From Octopus bimaculoides (Eukaryota): a stretch of 64,000 nt of DNA. The notes under the pieces are model-generated. The model was not told the DNA's origin, searched no databases, and worked only from the letters and a program-made list of their open reading frames with translations. Position numbers and translations under genes: made by a program. Location of the stretch: assembly GCF_001194135.2 (NCBI RefSeq), contig NC_068986.1, positions 81,403,967-81,467,966 on the forward strand, given 5' to 3'. Shown piece after piece: positions 157-62,432 of this stretch (positions are counted from its first letter, which is position 1; every line of letters starts with the position of its first letter).

Positions 157-364
157 GATTTCACAATAGTTTTTAACGCTGATATTCTAACTCTGTCCAC
201 GAACCAATCCATAAGATAACCAGACATTTTCGGTGCACACCGGTAGAGCTTAAAAAACCTATGATAATTATTAAGTGCCCAAGCAGATCTCACATTTAAT
301 GCATGAGAGACACACTCATCTTTTCTATGATTTGATTTGAGAGTTGCCAATGCAGTTGTTAAAT
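157..364 (-). CDS. LENG8: LENG8 exon 15 (DLTTALA...ALKTIVKS)
   Basis: 208 nt, ttttaaag acceptor and GTATGT donor, PCI-like helical region; the next exon is outside the window. Confidence 0.93.
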
Positions 365-5346: not shown

Positions 5347-5397
<51 letters not shown>

Positions 5398-5502
5398 NNN
5401 NNNNNNNNNNNNNNNNNNNNNNNNNNNNNNNNNNNNNNNNNNNNNNNNNNNNNNNNNNNNNNNNNNNNNNNNNNNNNNNNNNNNNNNNNATATATATGTA
5501 TG

Positions 5503-5536
<34 letters not shown>

Positions 5537-8500
5537 TACACACACACAATAGGCTTCTTTCAGTTTCCATCTACCAAATCCACTCACAAGGCTTTGGTTG
5601 GCCCGAGGCTACAGTAGAAGACACTTGCTAAGGTATCATGCAGTGGGACTGAACCTGGAGCCGTGTGGTTAGGAAGCAAACTTCTTACCACACAGCAATT
5701 GTTTACGCAATATGTTGATTTTCATTGAATGCTACTGAAATGATAATAATAGCATAAAAGATGTTTAGTGTACAAACTGCCCTTGTACACAATGAACCCT
5801 TGTAAATGATTTAGGAAAGACCAGTTAATAAACGAGTGCATTAATGTCTTAATGAGTCAACATGACTTTATCAAAAATATACTGGAAATAATTCATCGTA
5901 GAACTTTTGTAAGCTTTCTCTGCTTCACCTGTAAACCATAACAAACAAGACTAAAGAGTCAAGATTCATCAAGACCTGAAACTATACTTACTCTCTGTCT
6001 TTCTTTCCTTTCTTGCCACCAAAAGAATCCTCTCTAAAACGTCCACGTGATGCTCTACCTCGAGCACCACGACCACGTCCTCGACCTCGGTTTTTGTTGC
6101 CAAAACTATGTTTACTCACATACTTCTCTGATGAGCTACTGTCGTCAGAGACACTAGAACTGTCACTGGATGAAAAATAAAAACATTATTATTGTTTCTT
6201 TTTCATATATAAATCTCACCATTATCAGCATCATTTTAACATCCACTTTCCCATATTTACATGGGTCAGGTAGAATTTATTGAGGCAAATTTTCTATGGC
6301 TGGATGCCCTTCCTGTTGCCTACCCTCAACTGTTTCTAAGCAAAGTAATATTTTCCCATGGCCAGATATATTTTCCTGAAGACTGAAAATGAACAATACC
6401 ACTTGTTTGATGGTGACACTCACAACTATTGCATGATGTCAATACAAGGATACATACATATCTACAATGGGCTTTTTTTCAGTTTCTGTCTACCAAATCC
6501 ACTCACAAAACTTTGACTGGTTTAAGGCTATAGAACACACTTGCATAAGGTACTACAACAGTGAGACTAAACCTGAAACTATGTGGTTGGGAAGTAAAAC
6601 TTCTCAACCACATAGCTGGCATTAGCTGGACAAGTTGTTAGGGTATGCATCAGTTCTTGTTTGATATTACTGCTCCCAGTGGGACCATTCCTCATTCACA
6701 CATTTTCATTTATGCATGATTTCTGCAGTTAGATTACCTTCCTATTACCAACTACCCTATAGAATGTACTGGGTGCATTTCATCAGGGCACCAACACTAG
6801 AGAGTTTGTTGTATCCACATGAAATAGATATTTAACCCTTTAACATTTAAACAGGTCACATTCAGTTCAAATACTTCATCTGTTTTATGTCCAAACTGAT
6901 GTCTATCCATCAATGTCATATAAAAAAAAAAACAATCACATCATTGAAGTCTTGAAGCTATGTGATAATAAAACTTTAATTCAAAACTATGTGAAACAAG
7001 CATTACATTTGACAGAACAATCTGAATGCTTAAGAGTTAATGAAGTTTAACAGTCACTCTTTGAACAATGATTTTGGAAGTGCAAAATGAACTGACTGTA
7101 ATGACAACAATTATAAAGAAATGTTAACTTTTAATCATTTTGTTATATTGCTCTAATTTAATTCTATGTTCTGACTAAGTATCAAACTAAGTTTAGTGAC
7201 TCTGCTTTACTTCGTGCATTCACCTCGTGTCCTTTTAAAGTGAACTTTTGACTACCTTCTAATTTGCATACTGGTTTGTTTCATAAGTGGCATAATACTT
7301 TTTGCAGGTAGATCTTTAGGTTCTGCCCTTTTTTTTAATTAGCATGCATTTTTGAGTATATATTGCATTGTATTTGCTTACATATTGACTCCATTATTGG
7401 CTTGCATTCGAGTAATGTAATCCAAGTTAATAATTCTGTATTAAAACATAACACTTTTAATAAATTTAAAAGCTTCACATTGTAGTTTAAACCATAAATC
7501 ATTTATCAAGATTATTTACGCCATAATCAAAACATCAGTGAAATAGCCCTAACATTACAATACTACTTTAAAAATGTAGTAAAATTCTTACACTAACATT
7601 TAAAAATCTGTTGGAAATGTTTCAACTAAAGACAAATGGAAATCAAAGACTGAACCAATTCAAACAAAATACCTGCTGTGTCTTCTGTGCTTTCGTGCTA
7701 CAGATCGTGAATATTTGTCTCTGACAGAAACTACTACAGCAGCTGGGGAACGTGAACGACTTCTGGATTTACTACGTGAACGTGAACGAGATGTCCTATA
7801 GGTTGGAACTCTGTCCCCATTGTAAGGACAACGCACTGATGATCGATTGTTTGGTGGTTCAGGATCATCTCTTTCCCACCGACTTCGTTTGCGCTTCTCT
7901 AAACAAGAAATACTAAAAAGACAGAAAATAAAAATGGAGTTTTATATTTTAATTAAGTCTTAGAAAATGCCAAATTTTCTTATATTAAGAACTTTACTGA
8001 AATTTAAAATCTTTTCTTTGAAACTTGTAGTATTCTAGGAGATTAAACTGAAGAAAATATTCAAAACGCTTAGCTTGTCTGCTTCTCCAAATCAATCACT
8101 ATACACAATTATAAACAACACTTTTATTGCATGTAAACCTAGCCACATATCAGTGTTAGCTTTACTCAATCTGATCTCATAAAAATTGTTCCTAAAACAA
8201 ATTTCCTGCTTACACTTAAAAAGTTAATGCACTTGATACATCAATTTAGGTGGGCATTTGTCACCATTTCCCTGAATAACAACTGTTTCCTTCGTATCTA
8301 ATAAAGAACTCAAGCAGTCAGTTTTTTTTTTTGTTCTTTTTCTCTCAATATAATACATTAAGGTCACATTTCAAAGACAACATTGAGCTTGTACTTTATA
8401 CCACTACATAGTTGGGGCTGAAAAGTAAAAGGGTTACCATAAAATTGATTTTGAAGTAAAACTAGATCAAAGATATCTTTAGTATAAGGTGAAATCTAAT

Positions 8501-11500
8501 GCAGTAAACTGCTTCAGGTTAAAATACATCAGTGATATACAAGATGAAATATACCGCAAAAGTCAAAAGCAGTAAACTACGATATAAAAACTAATTCTTG
8601 AATCTAATATGGAAATACTACAGAAGACAAAGTATCCTTTTAACTTCACTGTCCTTTACTATTTTCATTCTGAAGTGTGAAAACATACAATAGTACTTAC
8701 TCAGGCAAGGGTTCTTTATACCAGTCAATATTCCATGGAGTTTGGTCATCAAATATGCCCTTTAACTTCATCTTTAGACATCTTTCCATTTCATCTTTCT
8801 GGTTTTCTTCACTAACACTGGCAAATGCTCTTTGTACATAATCTCTAAAACATTCCAGATGGAAGATAATAAAGTTGCCATAGTTACACAATAAAGCAGG
8901 GGGTTTTTTGTGTTTTTTGTTGGGGGTATGGTTTCTAAGGAAAATAGAAATACCTATACTCTGAATGGAGTAGCTATTGTTCATGTAGTTTAGACCCAGG
9001 GGAAGCCTAACTGAGCAGACCTATGACTAAAGGTATTATACTCATTACCATTCCAACTTTGATGGATAGCTAATGTATCCATTCCATATTTCATATCATG
9101 AGTGTAATTCACAAGAAATTTGGCAGCTATTTCTAGCAGGCTGCATAACTACAAAGAGGTAAAGTGGCAATCCATGGGAAATCAGAACTGAAGGTTATGG
9201 AAAGTATCTTTTTATCTCTGGTATAGACTTGCTGCAATAGCTCCATCTATATACATATTCCTTTCTACACCTGTATGGTAGCACCAACCATTTCCTTATA
9301 AAATCCACGAGGTTTGCAAGTTTCCAGGAATTGATCATATATAAAATATGGAGGCAAAGCTCAGACAGAGAGACATGAATTATCAATACTGAAGTGTTGA
9401 AGATGCAGCTACTTAGAGAATATATATTGCTGTGAATGTATTGGAGTACTAATCTCTATGTAAATGACATGAAGAATGGTATTCTTCTTGCCATTTAGGT
9501 AGAGATTAGCATGCATTTCAACTAACTGGATTCATGGAATATTCATAAAATATTGGTTTCAAGTTTTGACAGACGGTCAGCAATTTTGGAGGGACGGGGG
9601 AGGGGGTCAACTGCATCAATCCCAGTGCTTAACTAGTACTTATTTTATCAACCCCAAAAGGATGAATATAATGACAGAAGAAATGCCACTAAGCATTTTG
9701 CCTGGTCTACTAACAATTCTACCAGCTTGCTGCCTTAAATATTCGTAAAACATTGAAACCTAAATTAATAGATAAAAACTGATCTGATAAATTGTTTAAA
9801 TATTAAATAAGAAGAGGAAACGTTTGAAGTTGACAAATTTCATCTTTACTCACTTCAAATGGTAATCCCCACCTCTCTCTCACATACATACTAGCTTAAA
9901 AACCACCCCATTGGGTAGCTTTTAAGCTAGCTCTTGTGGAAGGCTCTTCATTGGGCCTTGGGCCCAATAATGACACTTCATGCATTGAGTACTTATTAAA
10001 TTTTATTAAACTTGACCAATATTTTTCAAGCAATGAACAATTTTCATCAAAACAATGATATAATTCGTCGACTTGGAACTTATTGCACAGCTGCATGATA
10101 AACAACATTTTTTGTCTTCCCATTTGGGGGTCAGTACAATTTTTTTTTCTTCTGTTTAACCTCTTTCTTTCTTTTGATTGTTTTCAACCATCACTATCAC
10201 CAGTACCACCACAACTGCCATACACACACCATCCAGACTTCTGGCGCCACCACCATCACCACTGTCTTTCACATTGCTTATTATCACCATCATCCCTGAC
10301 CATCTCAGCTACCACCACCACCACCATCATCATCATCACCATTACCATTGCCTCCGCCTCTATCACAAATACAGCTCATACTATTACTATCACCCCATTA
10401 CCATCACAACCTTCAATCTACTACCGTCCTCATAGTCTCTATGCCTACTATATTACTCTCACCCCAGCAGGAGGAATAATAGAAGTGTCATTGAATAGTG
10501 AGAGAGGGGATCAAAGTGTGACACACTGACACACAGAAATTCGTTTTGGCATTTATTATCATAGATATAGCGAAAAATCAGTATTAAGTTCATAAATAGA
10601 AACATTATATGAAATACAAACACTTACTTTAAAGAAGGAGGCCATTCTCCCTTCTCAATACCTGGAGATTTTGATCTAAAATAATAAAAAAATAAGATCA
10701 ATCAATGTGATAAGAATAGGCAAATAAAGTCAACCTGCATAATAATAAAACATAAATCCAAATACAAAAAAATCTTCCATTTCAAAACCCCACTTTGAAG
10801 GTGTTTCAAAATATTTGGAACAGAAATATTTACCCATATGACTAATTAAAAAATATAGCATAAATTACTTCAATATATTTCACATACTTTTACTATAAAG
10901 CTTAAATTATTAAACATTGATATAATCATTTTGTATTTCAATAATCATTCTACCATATACAGGCTTCACTCAATAAACTTGCTAGCCAGAACCAAAGCAC
11001 TTATTATTGGTTTCAAAGTCTGGCACAAAGCCAACAATTTTGGAGAAGGAGGTAAGTTGATTCCAACAACCTATGTCCAACTGATACTTATTTTACCAAC
11101 ACTAAAGGTATGAAAGGCACAGGCAACACCAGAGGCATTCAAACTCAGAATGTAAAGTCCAAAGAAATGCCACAAACCATCGTTCCTGGCAGGGTAACAA
11201 TTCTGTCAGCTCACTGCCTTCAAACCATTTATTATTGACAACAGTGATCTTATATGTGAGGGAACCTATTTTCTTATAATACTATATCAGTCTCTCATAA
11301 TTTTACTAAAACCTTCTGTATAACTTATTGAAGCACATGAATCAGTGAGAAACACACAGCTCCAACGACTGTCTCACAATACAATCTATTACTTACTCAG
11401 CATTGGAGGAATTATCTTCTGTTTGATTATTCTCGGGACTTGATTGATAATTAGACTGTTGTTGTTGCTGCTGCTGCTTTCCAGGATGAGGAGAACACAT

Positions 11501-14096
11501 TTTCTGCTGTGATTGTTGCTGCTGTTGAGGGAACATTTTTGTTCGGTAACTTGAAATGGCATTGGTATTCTGTACATTGTGACGTTTAGAGATCTGAAAA
11601 CGAATGCCCAGAGCATTTGCGTTCCTTACTGCAAGAAAAAAACAGAAAAGGAAAACATTACATTTATAATAATTGATTTTAATACTGGCACCCTCTTATC
11701 CACCCACATCTCGAGTGTCATTCTATAAAACAACCCTTTCCACCTATCCAGAACAACATCAGTCTCTGTCACAACTCTACATGACTTTTACAGGGATAAT
11801 CAGGAGAAATGCTTTCATCATATAATTTTTACTATATAGCTAATCACATGTAACAGCACACCATCACAGACACATTGTTACAATACAACACCACACCCTT
11901 ACCAAATACGTCTACATTACACCACAGACACAACCTCACTACAACTACCACCCAACAACACATCATCTCACAAACCCTCTCTTCCACACTGAACTTCACC
12001 ACAGATCCTCACTTCCACACTACACCCCACTCTCCACAGACACATCATACTTTTATTAATAAGTTACACATCACATCCAAGCCAATGAAGGAGCCTCTAC
12101 ATACTCATTCAACTAGCTAGAAATACAGCCAAATCTCCTTCAAATCACATCCCACTACCTTAAAATAAAAAGAACACATCGGATAATTAAGTTTCTAGAT
12201 ATGCTAGGTCAGTATATAAACACAGATGAGAAGGTCAGAGGTGGCACATGGATCAATGCTGAATTGACTAAATAATCTGGTACATGTTCAAACAACCACA
12301 CAATGTAACAGGCCCTTACTGCCACACTGTGTAACAGGTCCTTGCCACTATACCACTCAATATATCCCCTCTATGATGGAGGAAGTGTAGTTATAGATAA
12401 GATTGAAACATTCAATAGTCTCAACTGCCAACTTGCAGAGAAACACTGTCTGATCCCTTCAAACTTTCAAAATGTTGAATAAGAATATTGTTAAAAAATA
12501 TGCATGTATAAACCTATACATGGATAGAGATATGCATAATATTTTTATTGTGGCCAAGTCAGTCTCTTGCTACACTGAGTTTTGCCTGTGGATGCACAGA
12601 GTCATGAACTCAGGTTTTGCTGAGGAACTAAAAAAGTTTGCTTTGCAACTATGAGGTCTTGGGTTTTATAAAAACAAAAAAAAAACCTGAATACAGAAAC
12701 CAACTAAGCCCCAGCATACAGGCATGAAGGCTTGAGGCAGACATGTTTCTTTTTAAATTAATATTAGATAAAAGTGTAAACTGTTGGCAATACTACAAAA
12801 ATAACCCATTAACAATACTTGAATGGGATAATGGAAGAACAAATGAGACAATAAAAGAAAATTGCTATGTAATGATATTTAAGAAATGGTTAATGATTTG
12901 TTAAGGCCCTTTATAGATCCCTGAAGCATTTAATATTTCTTCTCCTTACTTTACACCAACAGAGGTAGTTGCTGGTGGTGTTGTTTTATACACTCACCTT
13001 GGAGTGTATTTTCTTAATTTTATCATTTCTGTAGTCTTCATCATTTAGCATCTGCTTTTCATGCTGGCATGGGTTAGATGGTTTGACCGAAACCGGTAAA
13101 CTGGAAGGCTGCACCAGGTTCCAATCTGATTTGGCATGGTTTCTATGACTAGATGCCCTTCCTAAACCAACCACTCCAAGAGTGTAATGGGTGCTTGGTA
13201 TGTGCCACTAGCACAGATGCCAGTTATGTGACGCTGGCATTGGCCACAACTATGATTTCACTTGGCTTGACTAAGCTAAGAAATTCTTACATTCTCTTAA
13301 TTCCCTGTAATTCAGACCACCCCATGGTCCCAGCAGACAAAATCGAAAAAGTGTGGCCCTGGAGGATGTGCTTGAACACCCAGACTTGCAGGACTCACAC
13401 TTGTGGATAACCATCTCCATGCAAAAAGCAGTGAACAGGGATATGGTCCAGGGGCCAAGAATGCTGGAGGTCTCCACTGCCAAAAGCTCAACCATAAACC
13501 TGCCAGATAGCAACTGATACTTTGACAATGTTGTTACTTTAACCTTGCCCACAACACAAACCTCTCTAAATTCTGCCATTTATTCAAACAAATACCGTTT
13601 TATAAAAACAAGAAAGAAATGTTACAACTAACGTTTATTCTTGGCCATTTGAAACCTTGGCATATTTGAAGGATAATCAGTATTGTGGTACTGGTGGCCA
13701 GGTGACAACTGTTGCTGCTGCTGCTGTTGTTGAGAAGACTGTTGTGGTGACTGTTGATCTGGCTGGTAATGCTGAGGTGGTGGCTGTTGTTGAAGGTGTG
13801 GCTGTGACTGTTGTTGATGAAGATGTGGCTGTTGAAGATGATGAAGTGAGGTTGGCATATGTGGTGGAGGTGGCTGCTGCATGCGTTGCTGTTGCTGATC
13901 TATGTTGTCTCCAGTGCCAGGAGGTAATGGTTGCTGGAGAACCATATGAGGAGGTGGAGGAGGTACCTGGTTAGGTGGTCTGTTATCTGGATGCTGTTAA
14001 AACAAGCAGAAGATGTATTTAAGATATACTAAACCCTATTATTATAACTAAGTCATTAGAAGAAGATTCTATGAATTAAGCAGTAACCTGTGTTGT

Positions 14097-14174
<78 letters not shown>

Positions 14175-17100
14175 TATATCCTTTAAGTTCGTTTATGGGA
14201 AACATTGTGAATATGCATATAAAAACTCCTATTCTATTATGCTGGCTACAGCTTAATGATGCCAACTTGCAATACCAGTTTTTTGGGATTGCACCAAGGA
14301 TTATTCTTGTTATTACTATATATCATTTGCTTTGTCTTTTTTTTTCTATGCTGGCATGGGTTAAACAGAAACACGTTTTACAACCATACAGCTAGATGCT
14401 CTTCCTATTGCCAACCCTTCTGTTTTCAAGTAAAGGATTTTTATTTCATTGGTTTTTGAAAGCACACAAGCAACAGGATGTATTTTTAAGATGGAATGTA
14501 ACATAGCAGTTTTTATGCAGGCAATAACAATCACGTGGTACATCAGCATCCACACTCATATAAACATAGACGATGTCATTATATTGACCAGATGTTGTAA
14601 CAAACAGCTGATCACAATGCTCAAAACGTCATAGCCAAATACTGCAAGGCATTTTGCCTAACACTAACAATTCAGCAGATCTACTACCCTAATAACACCA
14701 ACACCAACAATAATAATAATGATAACAACAACAAGAATAGAAATTCAATACTTACATTCTGCTGATACTGGCCATAAGGTGGTACATTACCGTACTGTTG
14801 TGGCATATTGTAATACCTAGTAAAGACGAAGAGGAATGTAATAAACTATATATCAAAGAAATAGGAACTAAACAGGTTTAATAGACAACAATAATAATCT
14901 TGAGGAGATTGCACAATAAATGTGTTATCTGCTGGATCATACTTACTGTCCATAAGGATACTGAGAATACATATTATAGTTGTTGTTGTAGTAGAAGTTG
15001 TTGCCATAATTACTGCCATTGTTGTTGCTGTTGTTGTTAGACTGGTCAGGTAAGTTCATGTTAGGATGGGGTGGTGGTGGTGGTGGTGGCATTTGTTGCA
15101 TGCTGTGGCCAACATTACCAGCTGGGTGAGGACTCTGAAGAGGTGGCGGAGGCATTGGTTGACAGGGTAAGACAGAAGCCGGCAGACCAAGACTTTGTTG
15201 AGCTGAAAGGACAGCAGCTTTTGTTGGACTTGTATCTTTGCAGCTATCAGTGTCAGTCTTTAACTTTAAACCACTTACAGCCTCTAATGCTTTCCGAGCA
15301 GTTTCCCATTCTGGTTTATTAGGATACATTACATTATCAGAACTAAAACAAAGAGTTTAAATGAAAATTTTAAAAAACAATTAAAAATTGTTTGAAGACA
15401 AGAATCTCAATAACAGCTAAAATAAAATAAAAAAGAATACAGGTGCAAAGAATCAAATATGTTAAGTATGTTGACATTTTGTTCCACTAGTTTATTTATT
15501 CTGCAGGTGAAATATAACAGATATGCAAGCTAACTAATAATCAGAACTATGTTTTTATGCTACATTATAATCTAAAGTAGAAAGAAACAATATCATTACT
15601 ATAAAAAACAAACTTCTCATGAAAGTATTGGGATCTTTTTTAAAACGGGGGCCACATTTTTCATTAACGAAACACTTTGAAACTTGGATCACTGGTAGAA
15701 TGTGTCATATAAAACATCTTTTTCTCTTAGTCTTCTTAAAAAAAAAAAGAAATCCATAAATTATTCCATGTTAAAGTTGTCGTATTTCTGTAATTTCAAC
15801 CAATCACTGACGTCCATTCAGCCGATATACATTAAGTGCCGCCTACATAAACAAACGATTCTGAAACAATTAACCCTAACCCTAGGGTTAGGGTTAAAGC
15901 AAATTTAAAATGAAAAAAAAAAAAAANNNNNNNNNNCGCTTAATCAGCCAAAGGAGTAAATATAAACAACTGAATACTTGTCAGTGATTGGTTGAAATTA
16001 TCGAAATAAGACAATTTTTTACATGAAATAAATTCGAATACAAAAATATTTTTCTGTTCTATAACACAAAATAGATAAGTATACGGAGTTTGAAAGTCTT
16101 TCCGTACCAAAAACACTACGTAAAACATTAATGAAAAATGTGGCCCCCGTTTTAAAATAGATCCAAGTATTGTAATAAAGCTGCAAGAATAAGAACAGGC
16201 TAGACGAAGTTCAGAGAGCTTCTACCTTTGTTGGTAACAAAGAGCCTCTCCCTCAGAGTGAAAGGTAGATTGTATGATGCTTGTGTGCAAACAACTATGC
16301 TACAAGGCAGTGAAACATGAGCTGTGACTGCAGAGGATATGCAAAAGCTTGAAAGAAATGAACTCAGTATGCTTTGTTGAATGTGCAATGTCAGTGTGCA
16401 TGTAAAAGAGAGTGTGTCACAAGAGAAAAATTGGGTACAAGAGGGAGGGCACAAGATGTAGTGTGCAAGAGAGAAGACTGTACTGATATGGCTATGTGGC
16501 GCATATGGACAAGGACAGATGCATAAATAAGTGCTGATCTCTAACTGTGGAGGGAACCTGTGGAAGAGGAAGACCCAGGATGACACGGGATGAGGCAGTG
16601 AAATAAAATCTTTGGAAGTTGTGTCTCATGGAGGCAATGACAAGTGGCCGAGACTTCTGGCAATTTGCTGTGCTTGAGAAGACACATTAAGTTAAGTGAA
16701 ACTACACTCATGGCCAGTGCTAGTGATGTGTAAAAGGTGCCTGTGCTGGTGACATGTGTGAGGCACCCATGCTGGTGAGACATAAAAGGCACCCATGCGA
16801 GTGATATGTAAAAGGCATCCATGCCGGTGTGTTAGGAATGGTATCTAGTTGTAGAAACTAGGCCAAAACGGACTGGAACCTAGTGCAGCTTTCCATCTTA
16901 CCAGTTCTAGTCGCACTGTCTAGCCCATGCCAATGTGGAAAATGGACACTAAATGATGATGTCAAAGATATTTAATGAAGATAAACACTACATGAAAGAA
17001 AGGCTGTTGGTGAAAAAACTGAGGGTGGTAGCAAAGATCATCACAATCATCATTCAAAAGGATAACACACTATTTTCCCACATCATATTTCCAGTGCTTC

Positions 17101-20100
17101 GTTATTTCATGTGCGTCACCCAGTATTTTGAGATCAGACTTAATCACATTTTATTCTTCTATGGTTACTGTCCATTATTACCATACAACACTTTGTAACC
17201 AAGTCCATATCAGTGTAATCTTTTCTTGCATACATCACCTGACAACTTTCAAGAAATCATACTCAAGCCATTCTTCTTCGGTTCCCATAGATCAACTACA
17301 GAAGTCCCACTACCAAATAGTATCACACATTTTTATAAATTCTTCATATAATCTATCTTCATATGATGAGAAAAAATATTTATAATAGGTCACTGAACTG
17401 TGACCACATCTTTGCTTTTATTCTAATGTCTACCGCTTTATTAGAGCCATCTCCAGGACTAAGTCACTAGAAACTAATAATTACATCTTGTGAGTCATCT
17501 TGATACTTCATGGGTTTTATTTCCATTTCTTTCAGTACATTTAGTCTGTTAGCCTGCTATAGACTCCACTATACTTTTTGTATACAAACTATTAAGTCCT
17601 ACCTACTCATTTCCTACGGAGAAGCTACCTCCCAGATGCTGAACTATTTAAATTTTTCTTTTTAATCTATAGATAAAATTAAAGAAACCTTGGGTTTTAA
17701 TCAAGCATCTCTCAAATAAACATGAAGTGAATGCCCTTTAGCAATAAAATAGTGAGGGAAGTCAAAGTAAATCACTTTACAAAAGATTAATTTCACAATT
17801 ATCAAAATAAAATGTATATGAAATCACAGTAATGATGACATTAGTAGCTGACAGCAGCATCCAGCATTTAGTTTGAAGTACTTTAATAGCTGACAGAAGT
17901 ATCCAGTGTTTTGTTTGATGTACTTTAGTAGCAGACAAAAGGAAGTTTTTGAGAGGTTACTGCAAAAAAACTTGTTTTGGAAGTAGACTTCTCTTGCAAT
18001 AATTTTGAGAAGTAGATAATGGAATTTTACATAATGAACAATTTTCTTTAACTAATTATGGCAATCATTCAAATTTCCTACATTTCTTCAACATTACAAC
18101 CAAATAGTTACACCAAAATTTGTTGTGAAAAAAAAAAAGTTCTTCAGTATATATTTCCTTGTGCACGCCTAAATACCTCTCTGCCCCTTTGTAATTGTTG
18201 CTTCTAAACCATTTTTTTTACAAATTAAAGGGTCCCCCCCCCCTTTTTTACAGTTTTCTAAATTGCAGAAACGGTTCCATTTGAGTAGAAATTTGATCAA
18301 AGGAATTTCAGCCAACAATATTCCTTTTTGTACATCTTGGAAAAGTTTGTCCAATATACAATTCCTATTGCTTTTTAAATAAGTCTTACACTTTACAGAG
18401 TAATCAGAATGCTAAAGGCCAACAGAAATCTAATTTTTTTAAATTAGATTTTTCATTCAATCTGAATACTTTAAAATAGACAATCAAGAGCAGATTCATC
18501 AACAATGCCTTAAGTTCACTTTTCCATAGAAAGAGGAATTTTCTGAGGCAGTATGTTACCAGATGCTCTTGCTATCACCAGTCCTTTCAGCAACTATTAC
18601 AACATACAGAAACACGGTATACTTTGGTGCTAATCTGCATTGAGTCACATCGAACAATTTAAAGAAAATGGATTTAAGAGGCATCAGATGTGGTGTGCAA
18701 GAGAGATGACTGCACTGGTATGGTCATGAGTTGCAAATGAATGAGGACAGTTGTGTGAAAAAGTGTCACACCCTAGCAGTTGAGGGAACCTGTGGAAGAG
18801 GTAGACCTAGGAAAACCTGGGATGAGGTGGAGAAGCACGACCTTCGAACATTGGGCCTTACTGAGGCAATGACTAGTGACTGGGACCTTTGGAGATATGC
18901 TGTGCTTGAGAAGACCCGACAAGCCAAGTGAGACCATAGCCCATGGCCTATACAAGTGGGTGTAACAAGCCCACTTATGAATACTCCTCATTCATTGGAC
19001 AATAAATCTTGCTTGTGGAGGCAAGTAAAATCAAAATTAAAAACAAAATTGCTGACGTGGCCGACGAGAGTACCACCAGATTGGCACTCATGCCAGTGGA
19101 ACGTTAAAAGCACATCCAAACGTAGGGTGAAGACCTATTGAGGCAAGTGTAAACAAATCAAAATCACTGACGTGGCCGATGACAGTACCGCCTGATTGGC
19201 ACTCGTGCCAGTGGAACGTTAAAAGCATATCCGAGCGTGATTGTTGCCAGGGCCACGGATTGGCACCGGTACCGGTGACACGTGAAAAACAACATTCGAG
19301 CGTGATCGTTGCCCGTGCCGCCGGACTGGCTCTCATGCAAGTAGCACGTAAAAATACCTTTTGAGTGTGGTCGTTGCCAGAACCACCTGACTGGCCCTCG
19401 TGCCGGTGGCACGTAAAAAGCACCCACTACACTCTCGGCGTGGTTGGCGTTAGGAAGGGCATCCAGCTGTAGAAACTTTGCCAGATCAGATTGAACCTGT
19501 TGCAGCCTCTGGCTTACCAGTCCTCAGTCAAACCGTCCAACCCATGCCAGCATGGAAAGCGGACGTTAAATGATGATGATCTTAACCATGCATGGACAAC
19601 CTGCGACCCTCGGACGAGTTTCAGGGTTACTAATTTCATACTAAGACAAATAAAATTGAAGAACTGCAAAAAATTCAGTGTAAAGTGGGCAAGTAATATT
19701 TCATTTGGAAATGGTACGATACGGCCCCAGTTAAAGAAAAGTTAGTCTACACAATTCCTCCGTAGCTTAACTACAATCTCTCATATAAATGTTATTTAGT
19801 TAATTGCGGGATGGAGTGATCTGATCTTAAATATTTGTTAAAAGTGTTATAATTTTATAGAAATTGTGTATCTTTTCTATTTGTTGTCAGTGTTTAGCCC
19901 GCGGTCAGGGAGTCCAACAATGACATTCCTTCAACCCCGCATCCTTGTAAGACTGCATTAGAAAATGTTCTTTCCTTTCCCTTTTTTTTAATGCGACTGG
20001 ATGTAATATAAGGGAAATTTGGATGTCATTTCTGGCAGGTTTAGTGACTACACAGAAGCTATAGTTATAGACGGTGGGCGTAAAGCGAAAGCAAAAGATA

Positions 20101-21296
20101 AAAGTGGCAGAGTAAAAATAACAACTGAGATATGAATCTAAACAAGCTCCATAATTAAACTGATTTTAATAAATATCAACAATTAATAAATAAGGGGCAA
20201 GTAATGCTCTAATTATGTTAATATTCTAAATGACGGGAGCCTCTGTGTATAGCAGTGCCAATATATGTTAAATGTAACATGAGAAAATCTGAGATGTAGT
20301 GAATGCCGCCATTATAAGGAGTGGCATTGAGGTGGTCTCACTGAAGTTTACAAGTGAAATAGCAGTGAAACTACAGATGGTCCGTCACATCAAATAATAC
20401 AAAAAAGTTTACAGACAAGAATAAATTTGATGCGAAAAACAGAAGCCTAACATTACGGGTAGATTCTTCGCCGAGCAGTTCACCTCAAGACATAAGAATT
20501 CCTTTCTTCCTCACACCAAAATAATTTTTTCCGTTTTATTTGTTGTATTACATCAACGTTCTTTAAACACGATTTTCATTTACAAAACACACGCCATTAT
20601 ATTTTAGAGATACAAAAATGAAACTCACTGTCTTATGTGATTTTTTTCATTTTTCAATAATTATTTGTAAAAATCATCAAGATACTTTTGTGTGACAGTT
20701 TGCTTAATTAACATCGTTATTTTCTATAGCTCTCTTTCCATATATATGTGTATGTAATGACAGCATTGTAGCCTATCTCCAGTGTGTAACATAACCTAAT
20801 ATTACTGTTCTGTGTTAGCTTATAATAATACCAGTTATGTTTTATATAAATACATACACACCAGTTCATATCTACATAACTTACATCAAAGGTAAATCAC
20901 TGAAAGCCCCCGCTATTTATATATCACATATCTGTCCTATATTGCCTCTTTACTTGACATGATACACCAGTCTGTTCCTGATATATATATATATATATAT
21001 ATATACCAACACTGTGTATGTATGTATATGTAAATATATATCAACACTGTGTATGTATGTATATGTAAATATATACCAACAGTATATATGTATATATACA
21101 TAAATCAGTCGATTTCTTTATCAGCACTAGACGCCATATTACAGTAAATTAACCAACACAAAATATTTGCTATAACATTAAAATAGCATTTACTGATCAT
21201 AGTAAAACAACGAATACATTTTAATATACATTCATAATACCTTTCTGATGTCTCCGACCCTGAGGTAGGGTTATTATTCCAAGAAACTGACGACAT
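157..21296 (-). CDS. LENG8: LENG8/THP3-like SAC3/GANP-domain nuclear RNA-processing protein; 15 coding exons in window (~828 codons), final exon beyond left edge
   Basis: All junctions are GT-AG and phase-consistent. The joined peptide has LENG8 hallmarks: [128 protein letters not shown]. Confidence 0.93.
1373..1502 (-). CDS. LENG8: LENG8 exon 14 ([13 protein letters not shown]...YIFTSNTL)
   Basis: 130 nt, ctcttcag acceptor and GTATCC donor, phase 0 to 1. Confidence 0.93.
1603..1671 (-). CDS. LENG8: LENG8 exon 13 ([23 protein letters not shown])
   Basis: 69 nt, ttgcag acceptor and GTAAGT donor. Confidence 0.95.
2030..2200 (-). mobile_element. RTE-tail repeat in LENG8 intron 12
   Basis: CATCATCATTTAAC.TCC..TTTCCAT..TGGCATGG family signature; related copies near 4320-4560 (+), 12995-13270 (-), 14330-14460 (-), 30057-30250 (-), 54530-54750 (+), 55020-55210 (-). 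Confidence 0.75.
2363..2497 (-). CDS. LENG8: LENG8 exon 12 (APDPSTIRP...IRQDLT)
   Basis: 135 nt, tttcag acceptor and GTAAGT donor, SAC3/GANP core. Confidence 0.95.
2831..2923 (-). CDS. LENG8: LENG8 exon 11 ([17 protein letters not shown])
   Basis: 93 nt, tgtccag acceptor and GTAAGT donor, phase 0. Confidence 0.93.
4320..4560 (+). mobile_element. RTE-tail repeat in LENG8 intron 10
   Basis: GTGGCAC.TAAAAAGCACCCACTACACTC ... CCATGCCAGCATGGAA signature. Confidence 0.75.
4921..5059 (-). CDS. LENG8: LENG8 exon 10 ([12 protein letters not shown])
   Basis: 139 nt, ctttag acceptor and GTAAGT donor, phase 2 to 0. Confidence 0.92.
5150..5695 (-). mobile_element. SINE family A copy with expanded internal (CA)/(TA) microsatellite spanning a gap
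   Basis: Reverse complement of the 35067 element on both sides of the N-run. Confidence 0.85.
5992..6165 (-). CDS. LENG8: LENG8 exon 9 (Ser-rich plus RG/RGG-like box)
   Basis: 174 nt, catccag acceptor and GTAAGT donor, phase 2 to 2. Confidence 0.88.
6836..7036. mobile_element. piggyBac-like MITE
   Basis: TTAA flanks; CCCTTTA.CATT ... GAATGCT.AAG.G termini. Confidence 0.65.
7673..7912 (-). CDS. LENG8: LENG8 exon 8 ([10 protein letters not shown]-rich)
   Basis: 240 nt; the in-frame acceptor is ctttttag at 7913-7914; AG|GTATTT donor. Confidence 0.85.
8701..8844 (-). CDS. LENG8: LENG8 exon 7 (KDYVQRAF...DWYKEPLP)
   Basis: 144 nt, ttttag acceptor and GTAAGT donor, conserved motif. Confidence 0.93.
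10628..10675 (-). CDS. LENG8: LENG8 exon 6 ([15 protein letters not shown])
   Basis: 48 nt, ttttag acceptor and GTAAGT donor, phase 2 to 2. Confidence 0.88.
11397..11628 (-). CDS. LENG8: LENG8 exon 5 ([10 protein letters not shown]...)
   Basis: tttcttgcag acceptor, GTAAGT donor, phase 1 to 2; motif matches the LENG8 G.KF.I.KR segment. Confidence 0.88.
13290..13580 (-). mobile_element. CRE-like non-LTR retrotransposon C-terminal endonuclease remnant in LENG8 intron 4
   Basis: [25 protein letters not shown] ... [10 protein letters not shown] resembles the KY..L...F.P.AVET.G..GP ... RGNA..IL motif. Confidence 0.55.
13633..13993 (-). CDS. LENG8: LENG8 exon 4 (poly-Q/P region)
   Basis: ttttaacag acceptor, GTTAGT donor, 361 nt open, phase 0 to 1. 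Confidence 0.88.
14756..14816 (-). CDS. LENG8: LENG8 exon 3 ([21 protein letters not shown])
   Basis: 61 nt, ctag acceptor, GTAAGT donor, phase 2 to 0. Confidence 0.85.
14947..15342 (-). CDS. LENG8: LENG8 exon 2 ([12 protein letters not shown]...YPYG)
   Basis: tgttttag acceptor, GTAAGT donor, conserved PEWE.AR.AL motif, P/Q/N/Y-rich. Confidence 0.93.
15631..16164. mobile_element. Non-autonomous foldback DNA transposon, Merlin-like (8-bp TSD, GG-starting TIR), in LENG8 intron 1
   Basis: TIR GGATC.TTTTAAAACGGGGGCCACATTTTTCATTAA at both ends; TSD AAGTATTG at 15623-15630 and 16165-16172; second internal inverted pair; central TTAGGG palindrome. Confidence 0.75.
16380..16960 (+). mobile_element. 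RTE-clade LINE 3' fragment
   Basis: Degenerate ERRL.W.G.V..M...GRGRPR..W ORF end plus family 3' UTR ending (GAT)n. Confidence 0.75.
17842..17945. repeat. Degenerate ~42-bp tandem repeat (about 2.4 units) in LENG8 intron 1
   Basis: TAGTAGCTGACAG.AG.ATCCAG..TTT..GTTTGA.GTACTT repeated. Confidence 0.7.
18680..19580 (+). mobile_element. RTE-clade LINE 3' fragment with tandemly duplicated 3' UTR
   Basis: [31 protein letters not shown]; duplicated ~70-110 bp UTR units; (GAT)n tail. Confidence 0.85.
21241..21296 (-). CDS. LENG8: LENG8 coding exon 1 ([18 protein letters not shown]..)
   Basis: AAG|GTATTA donor, phase 2, joins exon 2 in frame (AG+T=Ser). Further in-frame ATGs at 21341, 21365 and 21431 make the true start uncertain. 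Confidence 0.65.
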
Positions 21297-21359
21297 TAGA
21301 AATATTTCAACGTTCGTAACACAAAAAAAGACATCGGACATAGAACGATAGAATTTAGA

Positions 21360-21369
21360 GCGCATGCGT
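21360..21369. promoter_or_regulatory. NRF1/Ewg-like motif GCGCATGCGT
   Basis: 9/10 match to GCGCATGCGC within the divergent interval. Confidence 0.4.
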
Positions 21370-21564
21370 GCATTAGCATTCAACCAGGCAGCTACTGAAT
21401 GTTTCGTATTTATTACGGTAATATAATTCACTTGTTTCTTCAGAAATTTATATTATAAACATATATATTTAATCGATTAAAGAATCTTTTTTTCAAATTG
21501 TTTATACTATATTTCTAATGTTGATGGGAAGCTAGCTCTGCTTCGCCATCCTGACACAAACTTT

Positions 21565-21576
21565 TATGGCGCCAAT
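21565..21576. promoter_or_regulatory. E2F-like palindrome TGGCGCCA (ATTGGCGC on minus strand)
   Basis: About 50 bp upstream of the MCM10 ATG; replication genes are classic E2F targets. Confidence 0.45.
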
Positions 21577-21621
21577 TTTTTATGTTGTTTCGTTCGTAGA
21601 ATTACGAATTCTGTCTGTACT

Positions 21622-24159
21622 ATGATGGATGACCATTATAATTTAGAAACTCTAGTTGAATTTTTGGGAGAGGATTCATCAGAAGATGAAGAAGTAAAGG
21701 ATCAAAGTACTGCTGATTTTTCCAAAAACTGCAGTGAATCTCACACAAAATCCACTACATTGAGAAGTAATGTTCTGGGAAATAACCAACCAACTCCCAA
21801 CTCTGATCCTCACTCCAGTTCCCAAGAGAATCTTCTGGATGAGCTACAGAAAATGAGAGAACGTATGCAAGAACTAGAACAGAAATTACAGCAACAAAAC
21901 TCAACACCGTCACAGCCGGTAAATTCGAATTTACCTCAAACCAATTCTGACCCTAAATCTCATAGTTTGTTTAGTGCCGAAGTTGATCTGTTTACCTCAG
22001 AAGGTCAGTCAAGACACGTTTCTTGTTCTAAAACCTCACCATCTCCTCCCTCTGTGTCTGTCAAACCTTCCACTTCTTTAGTGAATAACGGCAGAGAATC
22101 TTCGACTTTAAAAAATGAATTATTTGGTGATAGTGATAGTGATTGGGAAGATTTGGAGGGAGAGAAACCAAAATTAAGTGAAGAGGGTAATGAAATGAAG
22201 AAATTACTGAAAAAGTCTGCAAACCAACGAATCGCCCATTCGGCCACGCATGACGTGGCAAGCCTGCGAGCGAAAGCTGTGAAGAAGAAATCACCAGTTC
22301 AAACTATCATTAATGTTGAAAAACAGTTTAATGGACAATCTGATCCAAAAGCAAACGTTTTCACAAATACAACTGCTGCTAATAACAAATGTGATACAGA
22401 TCCTTTTTCAGGAATTCGTATTGTTAATCCCAAAGTATCCTCTTCCACCATGAAAATACGAATGCAAGATAGGCGAATGATTAAATTATCTCACATCCAT
22501 AACAAAAATCCCAAGGAATTATCTGAATGTGACTGGGTAACTATTGCAGTTGTGGTACAGAAAGGGGAACCAAGGAAATCTTCCAAAGGAAATACATATA
22601 GTATATGGAAATTGAATGATTTACAGAACTGTGAGGAAAGTGTTTCATTTTTCTTGTTCAGTGAAGTGTATAAAACTCACTGGAAATTGGTTGTTGGTAG
22701 TGTGATCGGTTTATTAAATCCAAACATGATGGATAAATCTGAAAGAAAGCAATCTGATATTGCTTTCACCATTAGCCATCCCAATAAATTAATGGTTATT
22801 GGTGAGTCTGCTGATATGGGGAAATGCCAACAACGGAAGAAGAATGGTACTCCATGTACAAATATTGTGAATAAGATGCAAGGAGAATTCTGTGTCTATC
22901 ATGTCACTAGTGCTTATAAATTAACTTGTGCTAAAAGGAGTGAATTAAATAGCTACACTGGTGTCACTCCTAAATGCTTCACCAAGAAGGTTCTGCCTAA
23001 GGGAGGGATGTTTTTTTATGAAGGTAAATCTTATACATCATTACCCTTTGGCAATACACAGCAAAAAGACAAAATTACTGTGAACAAACTGCAACATCAA
23101 CAGAATAAGCTGGGACAAGCTAGGCTGTCAACAATGAGTCTTCAGAAGATCAGTGGCAAAGATCAGGCAATTCTTAATAAACTTTCTTCAGATAAGGATC
23201 AGGCATTCTTAGATATGCTGAGTACACCATCAGTTGGGTCAATGAACCTCGTGAAACATTTACTGAAGAAAGAGAAGATTGCGGCAGAGTCTGGGACAAA
23301 TGTCTCTGTTGTTTCTATCAGCCCATTAGAACTTCTCAAGAAACACAAACAACAAATGGAAATGAAAAAAACAATCACTAAACTGTCTAATCCAGTTTTA
23401 GGGAGGGGTTTACAAACTGGATTAAACATTAACTTAGATTGTGTCAAGCCAGGATCCTCAAATTCTTCTGAAATATCAAAAATATTGGCTGTCAAGAAAA
23501 TCCAAAGTAGTGGAGGGCTTCAGAAAGAAGATCCTAATGCTGTCCGTAAACAAAATGATTTAAAGGTTATGGAAAAGATTAAGAAAAGAATCTCCCAAGA
23601 CTTACAACCATTGACAGAAGAGGTGTCTGCTTCACAGCCTCCTCAAGCTAAGAGATCAAAACTATTAGGAAATATTGACTTAAATTCATCAGAAATAAAG
23701 AAATTGATGAAATTAAAGTCATCCCATTCTGGTGCCATTACAGAAATGGAAAATGAAAAACAGGAGAATTACTTCAATACTTTGGAGAAGAAAGAGGCAT
23801 GTGAAGTCAAAATGCAATCTATAACTGAAATGAAATGTACATTGTTCAGCTGCAAGTTGTGCAGCTATACTGCATTATCTATTGGTGATAGGTGCAAGAA
23901 AGAACGCCATCCAGTGAAGAAACATGAAGGCATGAAACGATTCTTCAAATGTCGTAAATGTAAAACTCGTCGCATTGCTTTTACACTGATGCCTAAAGAT
24001 CCTTGCAATGAATGTGGTGAATATAATTTTGTAAAGACCTCAATGATGCCTGAGAAATCAGGCCCTAAACTTCAATCTGAACAACTCTCCTTGCGAGGGG
24101 ATGAAGCAAAGAATTTGAATAGTTTGTCCTATAATATAACTGCTTCCATTGAACTCTAA
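21622..24159 (+). CDS. MCM10: DNA replication factor MCM10, full length (845 aa), intronless CDS
   Basis: N-terminal coiled coil (LLDELQKMRERMQELEQKL); OB-fold (DPFSGIRIVNP, DWVTIAVV, YSIWKLNDL, FFLF, GSVIGLLNP); CCCH zinc finger (C..RKKNG..C.NIVN....EFC.YH); C-terminal zinc motifs (CKLCSY..C..H; CRKC..C..C). No stop or frameshift. Confidence 0.97.
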   Translation: MMDDHYNLETLVEFLGEDSSEDEEVKDQSTADFSKNCSESHTKSTTLRSNVLGNNQPTPNSDPHSSSQENLLDELQKMRERMQELEQKLQQQNSTPSQPVNSNLPQTNSDPKSHSLFSAEVDLFTSEGQSRHVSCSKTSPSPPSVSVKPSTSLVNNGRESSTLKNELFGDSDSDWEDLEGEKPKLSEEGNEMKKLLKKSANQRIAHSATHDVASLRAKAVKKKSPVQTIINVEKQFNGQSDPKANVFTNTTAANNKCDTDPFSGIRIVNPKVSSSTMKIRMQDRRMIKLSHIHNKNPKELSECDWVTIAVVVQKGEPRKSSKGNTYSIWKLNDLQNCEESVSFFLFSEVYKTHWKLVVGSVIGLLNPNMMDKSERKQSDIAFTISHPNKLMVIGESADMGKCQQRKKNGTPCTNIVNKMQGEFCVYHVTSAYKLTCAKRSELNSYTGVTPKCFTKKVLPKGGMFFYEGKSYTSLPFGNTQQKDKITVNKLQHQQNKLGQARLSTMSLQKISGKDQAILNKLSSDKDQAFLDMLSTPSVGSMNLVKHLLKKEKIAAESGTNVSVVSISPLELLKKHKQQMEMKKTITKLSNPVLGRGLQTGLNINLDCVKPGSSNSSEISKILAVKKIQSSGGLQKEDPNAVRKQNDLKVMEKIKKRISQDLQPLTEEVSASQPPQAKRSKLLGNIDLNSSEIKKLMKLKSSHSGAITEMENEKQENYFNTLEKKEACEVKMQSITEMKCTLFSCKLCSYTALSIGDRCKKERHPVKKHEGMKRFFKCRKCKTRRIAFTLMPKDPCNECGEYNFVKTSMMPEKSGPKLQSEQLSLRGDEAKNLNSLSYNITASIEL

Positions 24160-24850
24160 TTTGGAATTATTTTCACACCTAAACATTGCTCATGAATTTG
24201 ATATTTTTTTTTACCATGTATATTATAAACTCGAGCACTTTATTCACAGACATTCATTTTTAGTGAATGTTGGAAACATTTTCATTTTGATAGCTCACTG
24301 CTTCCATGTGTGTGCATATATATAGTCCTGTAAATCCTTTTTATCAATCATATCTATGTAAACATTTATTTTATAAAGTATTTATTTTTTCAAATGTTAG
24401 GATGTTTTTTATTTCACTGTTACTTTGAAAAACAAAATTCGTCTACTAATTTTCATATGATTCTATCAACTTTTGAACTTTGTTGAAGTGGGTAGAGAGG
24501 ATAGGTGAGGGCAGGTAGTGTACCACCCTCTAAAGAGATATAATTAGGGTGTTACACTATCAGTATTGAAACAAGAAGTAGGATGAAGCTGGATTATAAA
24601 ATCACTATGGCCTGCAAGACTTAAGGGTAATCTCTTATCAGTTAATAGGTCAGTCTTAATAGTTATGGTCAGTGTTTCGTGTGTTTTGCGCTTATTGTTT
24701 GACCACATTGGTATTTTTAACCAGCTGTTAAATCTCTCTCTAAGGCATAGAAAACCTGTAAAATAATGATGATGATGTGTGTGTGTGTGTGCATATAAGT
24801 TTATTATATTATTTTTGGTACAACCATTTAGAAACTGCTGTAGCATGACC

Positions 24851-48108: not shown

Positions 48109-48712
<604 letters not shown>

Positions 48713-62384: not shown

Positions 62385-62431
<47 letters not shown>

Positions 62432-62432
62432 A

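What the first reader, a model, noticed from the sequence alone, without database searches (positions are those of the whole stretch)
21622..24159. Intronless, fully intact MCM10: possible retrogene that replaced its parent
Seen: one 2538-nt ORF holds every MCM10 domain with no introns, while the neighbouring LENG8 is split into at least 16 exons. Known: human MCM10 has many coding exons, and complete intron loss is the signature of retroposition. Inference: a processed MCM10 mRNA was inserted next to the LENG8 promoter in this lineage and now works as the, or a second, essential replication gene. No poly(A) remnant or TSD is visible, which would fit an old event.
Basis: partly seen in the sequence, partly recalled or inferred. 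Interest (0 to 1): 0.72.

Follow-up and report, generated by a model that had tools for sequence, protein, structure and literature searches.

The report
Intronless octopus MCM10: retrogene replacement
In octopuses and their relatives the essential DNA-replication gene MCM10 is a single intron-free, expressed gene beside LENG8, whereas other animals have a ~20-intron MCM10 beside UPF2, so an RNA-derived copy most likely replaced the original long ago.

Summary
Window 21622-24159 (+) of Octopus bimaculoides chromosome CM046606.1 is one 845-codon ORF with all four MCM10 Pfam domains. RNA contigs and reads lie on it without any splice.

- MCM10 has about 20 coding introns in a limpet and a scallop, 19 at shared positions. 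At least 10 of these positions are shared with amphioxus.
- In amphioxus, an annelid, the limpet and the scallop, MCM10 lies head-to-head with UPF2.
- In O. bimaculoides, O. sinensis and Argonauta hians the gene is intronless and head-to-head with LENG8. An unnamed cephalopod contig from the sister clade is intronless too and carries one LENG8-like exon upstream.
- The two 5' ends are about 190 bp apart, across a small CpG-rich divergent promoter.
- Only one MCM10 turns up among the annotated octopod proteins. It is under purifying selection (dN/dS 0.14-0.33).

No poly(A) remnant or target-site duplication survives, which is expected at this age. The octopus UPF2 locus and Nautilus could not be examined. 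In-place intron loss followed by rearrangement therefore remains a minority rival.

This is a new example of a known kind, retrogene replacement with co-option of a neighbour's promoter region, as in amphioxus SYCP1. Interest is moderate.

The parts
21622..24159 (+). MCM10 coding sequence. One exon, 845 aa: N-terminal coiled coil, OB-fold, CCCH zinc finger, and C-terminal CCCH and CCCC zinc motifs.
   Evidence: Purifying selection.
21555..21621 (+). MCM10 5' UTR, unspliced. Transcript 5' ends fall at about 21548-21576.
   Evidence: Read depth rises from 21555-21560. Contigs start at 21548 (X1) and 21576 (X2). No loose ends or joints.
24160..24400 (+). MCM10 3' UTR, about 170-240 nt. AT-rich, with a TATAAA/ATTTA region near 24370. 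No genomic A-tract follows it.
   Evidence: X2 contig ends at 24328. Raw-read depth is zero from 24401. Sequence. 3' flanks aligned.
21368..21535 (.). Transcript-free gap between the divergent LENG8 and MCM10 5' ends: the shared, divergent promoter region. CpG observed/expected is 1.55 over 21330-21621, against 0.31 for the window.
   Evidence: Conserved blocks with O. sinensis and Argonauta.
21360..21368 (.). GCGCATGCG palindrome at the LENG8 5' end. It resembles an NRF1 site; that identification is from memory and is untested.
   Evidence: It is the only occurrence in 64 kb, with 0 expected in shuffles. Conserved in Argonauta and degenerate in L003.
21567..21576 (.). TGGCGCCAAT: an E2F-like element (TTGGCGCC on the minus strand) overlapping a CCAAT box, at the MCM10 5' end. 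It is a candidate cell-cycle element and is untested.
   Evidence: Single occurrence, but 0.46 expected by chance. The GGCGC core is conserved in Argonauta. L003 has GGCGGCAAAA, which is TTTTGCCGCC on the minus strand.
21240..21350 (-). LENG8 exon 1, the 5' end of the divergent neighbour.
   Evidence: Read depth of 30-40 over 21248-21340, falling to about 0 by 21367. The LENG8 mRNA contig ends at 21329.
1..21365 (-). LENG8 (SAC3_GANP family) gene body, multi-exon, running off the window start.

Best explanation
This is a case of retrogene replacement. The steps below are marked as shown or inferred.

1. In a common ancestor of octopods and the sister cephalopod clade (probably the coleoid stem), a fully spliced MCM10 mRNA was reverse-transcribed and inserted about 200 bp upstream of the LENG8 transcription start, in the opposite orientation. 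This step is inferred.
2. The copy used that CpG-rich promoter region as a divergent promoter. It has its own core promoter about 190 bp away, which carries an E2F-like/CCAAT element. The anatomy is shown; the function is inferred.
3. The original gene, with about 20 introns and lying head-to-head with UPF2, was then lost. This is inferred from the absence of a second copy among annotated octopod proteins.
4. The single-exon gene is now the organism's MCM10. It is an intact, selectively constrained, transcribed replication factor. This is shown.
For: Intronless state
- One ORF, and the transcript is colinear with the genome.
- The same is true in O. sinensis, Argonauta hians and an unnamed cephalopod genomic contig, L003.

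Ancestral state is intron-rich
- Patella has 20 coding introns and Argopecten has 20, with 19 at the same residues.
- At least 10 of these positions are shared with amphioxus. All fall inside the octopus ORF.

Ancestral neighbour is UPF2
- MCM10 lies head-to-head with UPF2, 1.2-7.7 kb away, in Patella, Argopecten, Branchiostoma and Paralvinella.

Derived neighbour is LENG8
- MCM10 lies head-to-head with LENG8 in three octopod genomes. L003 has one LENG8-like exon upstream.
- There is no UPF2 exon in the 64-kb window, in L002 or in L003.
- There is no MCM10 within 10 kb of LENG8 in Lottia or Plakobranchus.

Divergent promoter
- A 190-bp transcript-free gap separates the two 5' ends. CpG observed/expected is 1.55 there.

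Single copy
- Among the hits of the one MCM10 protein search, the named Octopus and Argonauta proteins fall into just two clusters, one for Octopus spp. and one for Argonauta hians. A 43%-identical limpet protein was still detected, so a diverged paralogue should have been found.

Selection
- dN/dS is 0.33 against O. sinensis and 0.14 against Argonauta. It is 0.06-0.07 in the OB/zinc-finger and C-terminal domains.

Precedent
- Amphioxus SYCP1 followed the same route (PMC5803294).
Against: - No poly(A) remnant or target-site duplication is present. No empty site was seen, because no cephalopod outgroup such as Nautilus was available.
- The octopus UPF2 locus was not recovered. That MCM10 has moved away from UPF2 therefore rests on UPF2 being absent from the window and from the 10-kb flanks, not on its known position.
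- Coleoid genomes were heavily rearranged (PMC9023564), so a changed neighbourhood alone does not prove retroposition.
- Biomphalaria shows that MCM10 can lose many introns in place.
- Absence of a parental relic was tested only among annotated or called proteins, not by searching whole assemblies.
- The taxon of L003 and L009 is inferred from a tree, not from metadata.
Confidence: 0.7

Rival explanations
1. In-place intron loss followed by rearrangement. The ancestral gene lost all its introns at its original locus by recombination with a reverse-transcribed mRNA. The coleoid-stem genome reshuffling later broke the UPF2-MCM10 pair and placed MCM10 next to LENG8.
For: Biomphalaria MCM10 has a single 2232-nt exon that replaces about 13 ancestral central exons, while the flanking introns are kept. 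This shows RT-mediated loss in place for this very gene. Coleoid genomes underwent large-scale reorganisation (PMC9023564). No poly(A) remnant or TSD is present.
Against: It needs two independent events. It needs loss of every intron, including the 5'-most coding intron (residue 30) and the 5'-UTR intron seen in Patella (first coding exon 4.1 kb into the gene). Biomphalaria, by contrast, kept its terminal introns. It also needs a breakpoint inside a 1-8 kb intergenic region that lands the gene only about 190 bp from another gene's start without loss of function.
Confidence: 0.2
2. Additional copy. The intronless gene is a functional retrocopy that coexists with an unannotated multi-exon parental MCM10 elsewhere in the octopus genome.
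For: The octopus UPF2 flank was not inspected. Gene annotations of large cephalopod genomes are incomplete.
Against: No second MCM10 appears among proteins of O. bimaculoides, O. sinensis, O. vulgaris or Argonauta hians, although the search reached 29-43% identical homologues. The intronless gene is expressed and constrained over a divergence with dS above 1. All cephalopod MCM10 transcripts recovered fall in one clade with the intronless genes.
Confidence: 0.07
3. Artefact: cDNA contamination or misassembly produced an apparent intronless gene.
For: None specific.
Against: The same intronless gene sits in the same genomic context in four independent assemblies. Its flanks are ordinary genomic sequence, including the LENG8 promoter.
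Confidence: 0.01

Closest known systems
Amphioxus SYCP1 retrogene replacement (Garstang & Ferrier 2018, PMC5803294)
   Same: A single-coding-exon copy of a gene that is multi-exonic elsewhere. It lies at a new locus and the parental copy is absent. Its 5' end sits next to the 5' end of an unrelated gene (CHIC), whose promoter region is used bidirectionally.
   Different: Here the gene is an essential replication factor rather than a meiosis gene. There is no de novo multi-exon 5' UTR; the transcript is wholly unspliced. The event is shared by deeply diverged cephalopods. The ancestral locus is itself a conserved divergent pair, with UPF2.
Orphan retrogenes (Ciomborowska et al. 2013) and retrogene replacement (Krasnov et al. 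2005), both as cited in PMC5803294
   Same: A functional retrocopy whose parent has been lost, recognised by a single exon at a locus different from the ancestral multi-exon gene.
   Different: These were mostly documented in mammals and are often younger, with poly(A) and TSD hallmarks. Here those hallmarks are erased. Loss of the parent is shown only at the level of annotated proteins.
Sowah retrogene and the Iroquois-Sowah block in tetrapods (Maeso et al. 2012, as cited in PMC5803294)
   Same: An ancient bilaterian gene linkage was uncoupled when a retrocopy elsewhere took over and the linked parent decayed.
   Different: In that case pseudogenised remnants persist because they hold Iroquois enhancers. 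Whether anything persists beside coleoid UPF2 is unknown.
Canonical metazoan MCM10 (Xenopus and human; PDB 3EBE, 3H15, 2KWQ)
   Same: Same domain set and same zinc-binding motifs. The internal domain aligns with Xenopus at E 1.9e-52.
   Different: Gene structure is 0 rather than about 20 coding introns. The neighbour is LENG8 rather than UPF2. The protein is somewhat shorter: 832-856 aa in cephalopods against 831-1198 aa in other full-length molluscan proteins.
RT-mediated partial intron loss in place (example found here: Biomphalaria glabrata MCM10)
   Same: Many adjacent ancestral introns were removed precisely, leaving one long exon.
   Different: Biomphalaria keeps its 5'-most intron and six 3' introns. 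The octopus gene keeps none and has a new neighbour.

Membership tests
MCM10 (replication initiation/elongation factor) | OB-fold plus adjacent CCCH zinc finger (internal domain) | tested here: met
   PF22379 at 5e-44 and PF09329 at 9e-15. Xenopus internal-domain structures match at 1.9e-52. C-x9-C-x11-C-x2-H is readable in the translation.
MCM10 (replication initiation/elongation factor) | Metazoan C-terminal domain with CCCH and CCCC zinc motifs | tested here: met
   PF24863 at 2e-44 and PF09332 at 4.5e-14. PDB 2KWQ matches at 3e-17.
MCM10 (replication initiation/elongation factor) | Biochemical function: binding to ssDNA, Pol alpha and CMG, and requirement for replication | not testable with these tools
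   Inferred from domain conservation and from dN/dS of 0.06-0.07 in the domains.
Retrogene (retroposed functional gene copy) | Lacks all introns of a parental gene that is multi-exonic | tested here: met
   The octopus gene has 0 introns in the CDS and UTRs. About 20 ancestral intron positions map inside the ORF.
Retrogene (retroposed functional gene copy) | Lies at a locus unrelated to the parental locus | tested here: met
   The ancestral neighbour is UPF2 in four phyla or classes. The cephalopod neighbour is LENG8. No UPF2 exon is nearby. Caveat: the position of octopus UPF2 was not obtained.
Retrogene (retroposed functional gene copy) | 3' poly(A) remnant. This is a hallmark of young LINE-mediated copies and is not expected to survive long divergence. 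| tested here: not met
   No A-rich tract lies after the transcript end in any of four species. dS between Octopus and Argonauta is already 1.1, so neutral hallmarks should be erased.
Retrogene (retroposed functional gene copy) | Flanking target-site duplication. This is also a hallmark of young copies. | tested here: not met
   One AT-rich direct repeat flanks the unit in O. bimaculoides. It has no counterpart in O. sinensis, Argonauta or L003, so I read it as chance.
Retrogene (retroposed functional gene copy) | Intact ORF, transcription and purifying selection, which together mark a functional copy | tested here: met
Retrogene replacement / orphan retrogene | Parental multi-exon copy absent from the genome | tested here: inconclusive
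   Only one MCM10 cluster is found among annotated or called proteins of four octopods. Neither a whole-assembly tBLASTn nor inspection of the UPF2 flank was possible.
Bidirectional (divergent) promoter pair | Head-to-head genes with transcription starts less than 1 kb apart, both transcribed | tested here: met
   LENG8 reads end at about 21350 and MCM10 reads begin at about 21555, with zero depth between them in three RNA runs.
Bidirectional (divergent) promoter pair | Shared regulatory activity or co-expression | tested here: inconclusive
   LENG8 exon-1 depth is about equal in X20, X21 and X22, but MCM10 depth is about 11, 0 and 15. The two genes are therefore not expressed in step.

The most novel reading that the evidence does not exclude
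UPF2-MCM10 is an ancient, constrained divergent gene pair, present in a chordate, an annelid and two mollusc classes. Coleoid cephalopods escaped it only because a retrocopy of MCM10 captured another housekeeping promoter (LENG8) on the coleoid stem. On this reading the event belongs to a wider wave of retrogene replacement of core genes that accompanied the coleoid genome reorganisation, and MCM10 is a datable marker of that episode.
Probability: 0.25. Interest if true: 0.6.

Novelty: new member of a known kind. Interest (0 to 1): 0.45.

Why it matters
MCM10 is an essential, single-copy replication factor. Finding it as a relocated, intron-free gene across octopods and a sister cephalopod clade gives three things.

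- A clean rare genomic change. It could serve as a phylogenetic marker for coleoids if Nautilus keeps the ancestral state.
- A natural experiment on how an S-phase gene is re-equipped with a promoter after retroposition. Here it has a new divergent partner, LENG8, and a candidate E2F/CCAAT element of its own.
- Evidence for a previously unremarked deep bilaterian divergent pair, UPF2-MCM10, and for its dissolution in coleoids.

The case also warns annotators that long single-exon housekeeping genes in cephalopods can be genuine. It does not reveal a new mechanism.

Tried and rejected
Locating octopus UPF2, the parental site
- A search with human UPF2 returned only vertebrates in the 120 listed hits.
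- An exhaustive representative search was run, followed by two cluster look-ups. It found amphioxus, hemichordate, cnidarian, insect and flatworm representatives, but no cephalopod or mollusc to use as a closer query.
- The UPF2 pieces in L004 and L005 are low-complexity N-termini and were useless as queries.

Target-site duplication
- Direct repeat D1 (21462-21498 and 24359-24395) brackets the transcription unit, and only 0.8% of control windows score as high.
- No equivalent exists in O. sinensis, Argonauta or L003, and neutral sites are saturated at this age. I rejected it as chance.

Downstream synteny with L003
- The only tblastx match (window 48760-49330 to L003 20014-20606) is a decayed non-LTR retrotransposon ORF2 tail, not a gene.

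Empty-site test at LENG8
- The Lottia and Plakobranchus LENG8 gene models are C-terminal fragments.
- No MCM10 and no octopus-window neighbour lies in their 10-kb flanks. Their true 5' ends were not defined, so this is only weak support.

Species identity of L003 and L009
- No paper cites the accessions.
- Their placement as sister to Octopodiformes rests on an NJ tree.

Other
- A literature search found no report of an MCM10 retrogene or of UPF2-MCM10 synteny.
Full report
WHAT IS THERE

The window is part of Octopus bimaculoides chromosome CM046606.1 (GCA_001194135.2); the ORF is at record position 81,425,588 onward. At 21622-24159 on the plus strand there is one 845-codon ORF. The stop-free frame is 892 codons long. 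The next longest in the window is 227 codons and is low-complexity. At the window's composition, with a stop probability of 0.069 per codon, an 845-codon open frame has probability about 5e-27.

The protein carries all four MCM10 Pfam modules far above their curated cut-offs. It aligns with the solved Xenopus MCM10 internal domain at 1.9e-52 and with the C-terminal zinc domain at 3e-17. The zinc ligands are in place.

TRANSCRIPTION

A 2754-nt transcriptome contig (run X2) is colinear with 21576-24328. Another contig (X1) starts at 21548. Raw RNA-seq reads cover the gene from about 21555 to about 24400. They show no splice joints and no loose ends at the 5' end. The joints reported all sit in the (TA)n and (GT)n microsatellites at 20981-21006 and 24775-24797. 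The transcription unit is therefore a single exon of about 2.8 kb, UTRs included.

THE NEIGHBOUR AND THE PROMOTER

Upstream, on the minus strand, lies a multi-exon SAC3_GANP gene with a 913-aa product. Its coding blocks are scattered from position 63 to about 21350. A query assembled from its exons retrieves proteins that their sources name LENG8, or leukocyte receptor cluster member 8.

In three RNA runs, reads of LENG8 exon 1 stop at about 21350 and MCM10 reads start at about 21555. Depth is zero in between. This is a divergent promoter of about 190 bp.

The stretch 21330-21621 has a CpG observed/expected ratio of 1.55, against 0.31 for the window and 0.35 for the MCM10 CDS. It holds two notable elements:
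- The only GCGCATGCG in the 64 kb, with 0 expected in shuffles. I recall this as the NRF1 consensus; that is a lead, not a test.
- TGGCGCCAAT at the MCM10 5' end, an E2F-like site plus a CCAAT box. It occurs once, but 0.46 occurrences are expected by chance.

Both cores are conserved in Argonauta, and related sequences occur in L003. LENG8 exon-1 depth is nearly the same in the three runs, while MCM10 depth is about 11, 0 and 15. The two genes share a promoter region but are not expressed in step.

COMPARISON ACROSS SPECIES

The same intronless gene, head-to-head with the SAC3_GANP gene, is present in O. sinensis and Argonauta hians. O. vulgaris has a 94%-identical protein in the same cluster.

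A 159-kb contig of an unnamed organism in an ENA assembly (L003) encodes an 856-aa MCM10 in one ORF. It has a LENG8-like exon 5.6 kb upstream. Its protein, and a 77%-identical one from Logan assemblies (P0005/P0055, locus L009), form the sister group of Octopus plus Argonauta in a neighbour-joining tree. All cephalopod sequences together are monophyletic against bivalves and gastropods. The simplest reading is that these two are decapodiforms, but I could not confirm the taxon.

Outside cephalopods the gene looks quite different:
- Patella vulgata MCM10 spans 49 kb and has 21 coding exons.
- Argopecten irradians MCM10 spans 28 kb and has 21 coding exons.
- Paralvinella and Branchiostoma each have at least 14 detectable exons.

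I mapped the intron positions onto the octopus protein. The limpet and the scallop share 19 of 20 coding intron positions (residues 30, about 45, about 73, 180, 222, 268, 322, 375, 417, 443, 474, 530, 557, 620, 660, 708, 746, 796, 809). Amphioxus shares at least 10 of them. All of these positions lie inside the uninterrupted octopus ORF.

In all four outgroups the gene immediately upstream, in head-to-head orientation at 1.2-7.7 kb, is UPF2. This was shown by MIF4G and Upf2 Pfam hits, and for amphioxus by tblastn. The UPF2-MCM10 divergent pair therefore predates the protostome-deuterostome split.

No UPF2 exon is present in the octopus window or in the Argonauta and L003 loci. No MCM10 lies within 10 kb of LENG8 in Lottia or Plakobranchus.

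COPY NUMBER AND SELECTION

The protein search reached homologues down to 29% identity. Among its named hits it found only one MCM10 cluster for Octopus spp. and one for Argonauta.

dN/dS is 0.33 between O. bimaculoides and O. sinensis (dS 0.08) and 0.14 against Argonauta (dS 1.1). It falls to 0.06-0.07 in the OB/zinc-finger and C-terminal domains.

INTERPRETATION

The best explanation is retrogene replacement. A processed MCM10 mRNA was inserted next to the LENG8 5' end before the split of octopods and the sister clade. It came to be transcribed from the divergent side of that CpG-rich promoter region. The UPF2-linked parent was then lost.

What is shown:
- the intronless, expressed and constrained gene;
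- the ancestral intron-rich state;
- the ancestral UPF2 linkage;
- the derived LENG8 linkage;
- the divergent-promoter anatomy.

What is inferred:
- reverse transcription and insertion as the route;
- the roles of the promoter elements;
- loss of the parent.

Retroposition hallmarks are absent. One flanking AT-rich direct repeat in O. bimaculoides has no counterpart in the other species, so I treat it as chance. With dS above 1 even within octopods, such hallmarks could not have survived.

THE MAIN RIVAL

The main rival is complete intron loss in place, by recombination with cDNA, followed by rearrangement. Two observations keep it alive. Coleoid genomes were extensively reorganised while Nautilus resembles other molluscs (PMC9023564). 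Biomphalaria glabrata MCM10 has lost about 13 central introns in place, leaving a 2232-nt exon flanked by retained introns.

The rival needs two events. It needs loss of every intron, including the 5'-most ones. It also needs a breakpoint that lands the gene about 190 bp from another gene's start. I give it about 0.2, against 0.7 for retroposition. A surviving unannotated parent gets about 0.07, and an artefact about 0.01.

COMPARISON WITH WHAT IS KNOWN

The phenomenon is known as retrogene replacement, or as orphan retrogenes. The closest described case is amphioxus SYCP1, a single-exon copy that replaced its parent and co-opted a bidirectional promoter from CHIC (PMC5803294). I found no report of an MCM10 retrogene or of UPF2-MCM10 synteny in the library. 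I therefore rate this as a new member of a known kind.

LIMITS

The octopus UPF2 locus, Nautilus and whole-assembly searches were out of reach (see the account of what was tried and rejected). The decisive tests are listed under next steps.

Noticed in passing
L006 12315-14546 (Biomphalaria glabrata MCM10): One 2232-nt exon encodes residues 77-820. About 13 ancestral central introns are gone, while the 5'-most intron and six 3' introns remain. This looks like an independent, partial, in-place intron loss in a heterobranch snail.
   Followed up: partly
L004, L005, L007, L014 (Patella, Argopecten, Branchiostoma, Paralvinella): UPF2 and MCM10 lie head-to-head, 1.2-7.7 kb apart, in a chordate, an annelid, a gastropod and a bivalve. 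This appears to be an ancient bilaterian divergent gene pair. I found no mention of it in the literature searched.
   Followed up: partly
window 24032: The assembly reads T (Val804), but every RNA read and contig reads A (Glu804). Glu is also the residue in O. sinensis and Argonauta. This is an individual variant or an assembly error in the CDS.
   Followed up: yes
window 21360-21368: The annotated LENG8 start codon (minus strand, 21365-21363) sits inside the unique GCGCATGCG palindrome and has almost no RNA cover. The true LENG8 start codon may lie further downstream.
   Followed up: partly
window 21330-21621: There is a small CpG-rich island (observed/expected 1.55 at only 33% G+C) in a strongly CpG-depleted region (0.31). 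The MCM10 coding sequence is depleted like the background (0.35).
   Followed up: partly
window 48760-49330; L003 20014-20606: Decayed C-terminal part of a non-LTR retrotransposon ORF2, with a CCHC motif and frameshifts and stops. It is present in both octopus and the unnamed cephalopod contig. It first looked like conserved synteny.
   Followed up: yes
window 4463-4678, 16861-16971, 19430-19741, 62390-62920; many copies in L002: A short interspersed repeat, seen as the translated motif ...[10 protein letters not shown]..., recurs in LENG8 introns and elsewhere in the window, and also in the Argonauta locus.
   Followed up: no
L005 17183-18521 (Argopecten MCM10 intron): A tandem array of about 42-bp units whose translation repeats the last 15 residues of the preceding exon. 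It appears to be a minisatellite derived from the end of that exon.
   Followed up: no
window 20981-21105 and 24775-24797: (TA)n/35-bp and (GT)n microsatellites on either side of the gene attract large numbers of chimeric or partly fitting RNA reads. They produce spurious joints such as 21006 to 24776.
   Followed up: yes
window ~48100-48600 and ~59560-60200: Runs of N (assembly gaps), the first of them inside a homopolymer or microsatellite-rich stretch.
   Followed up: no
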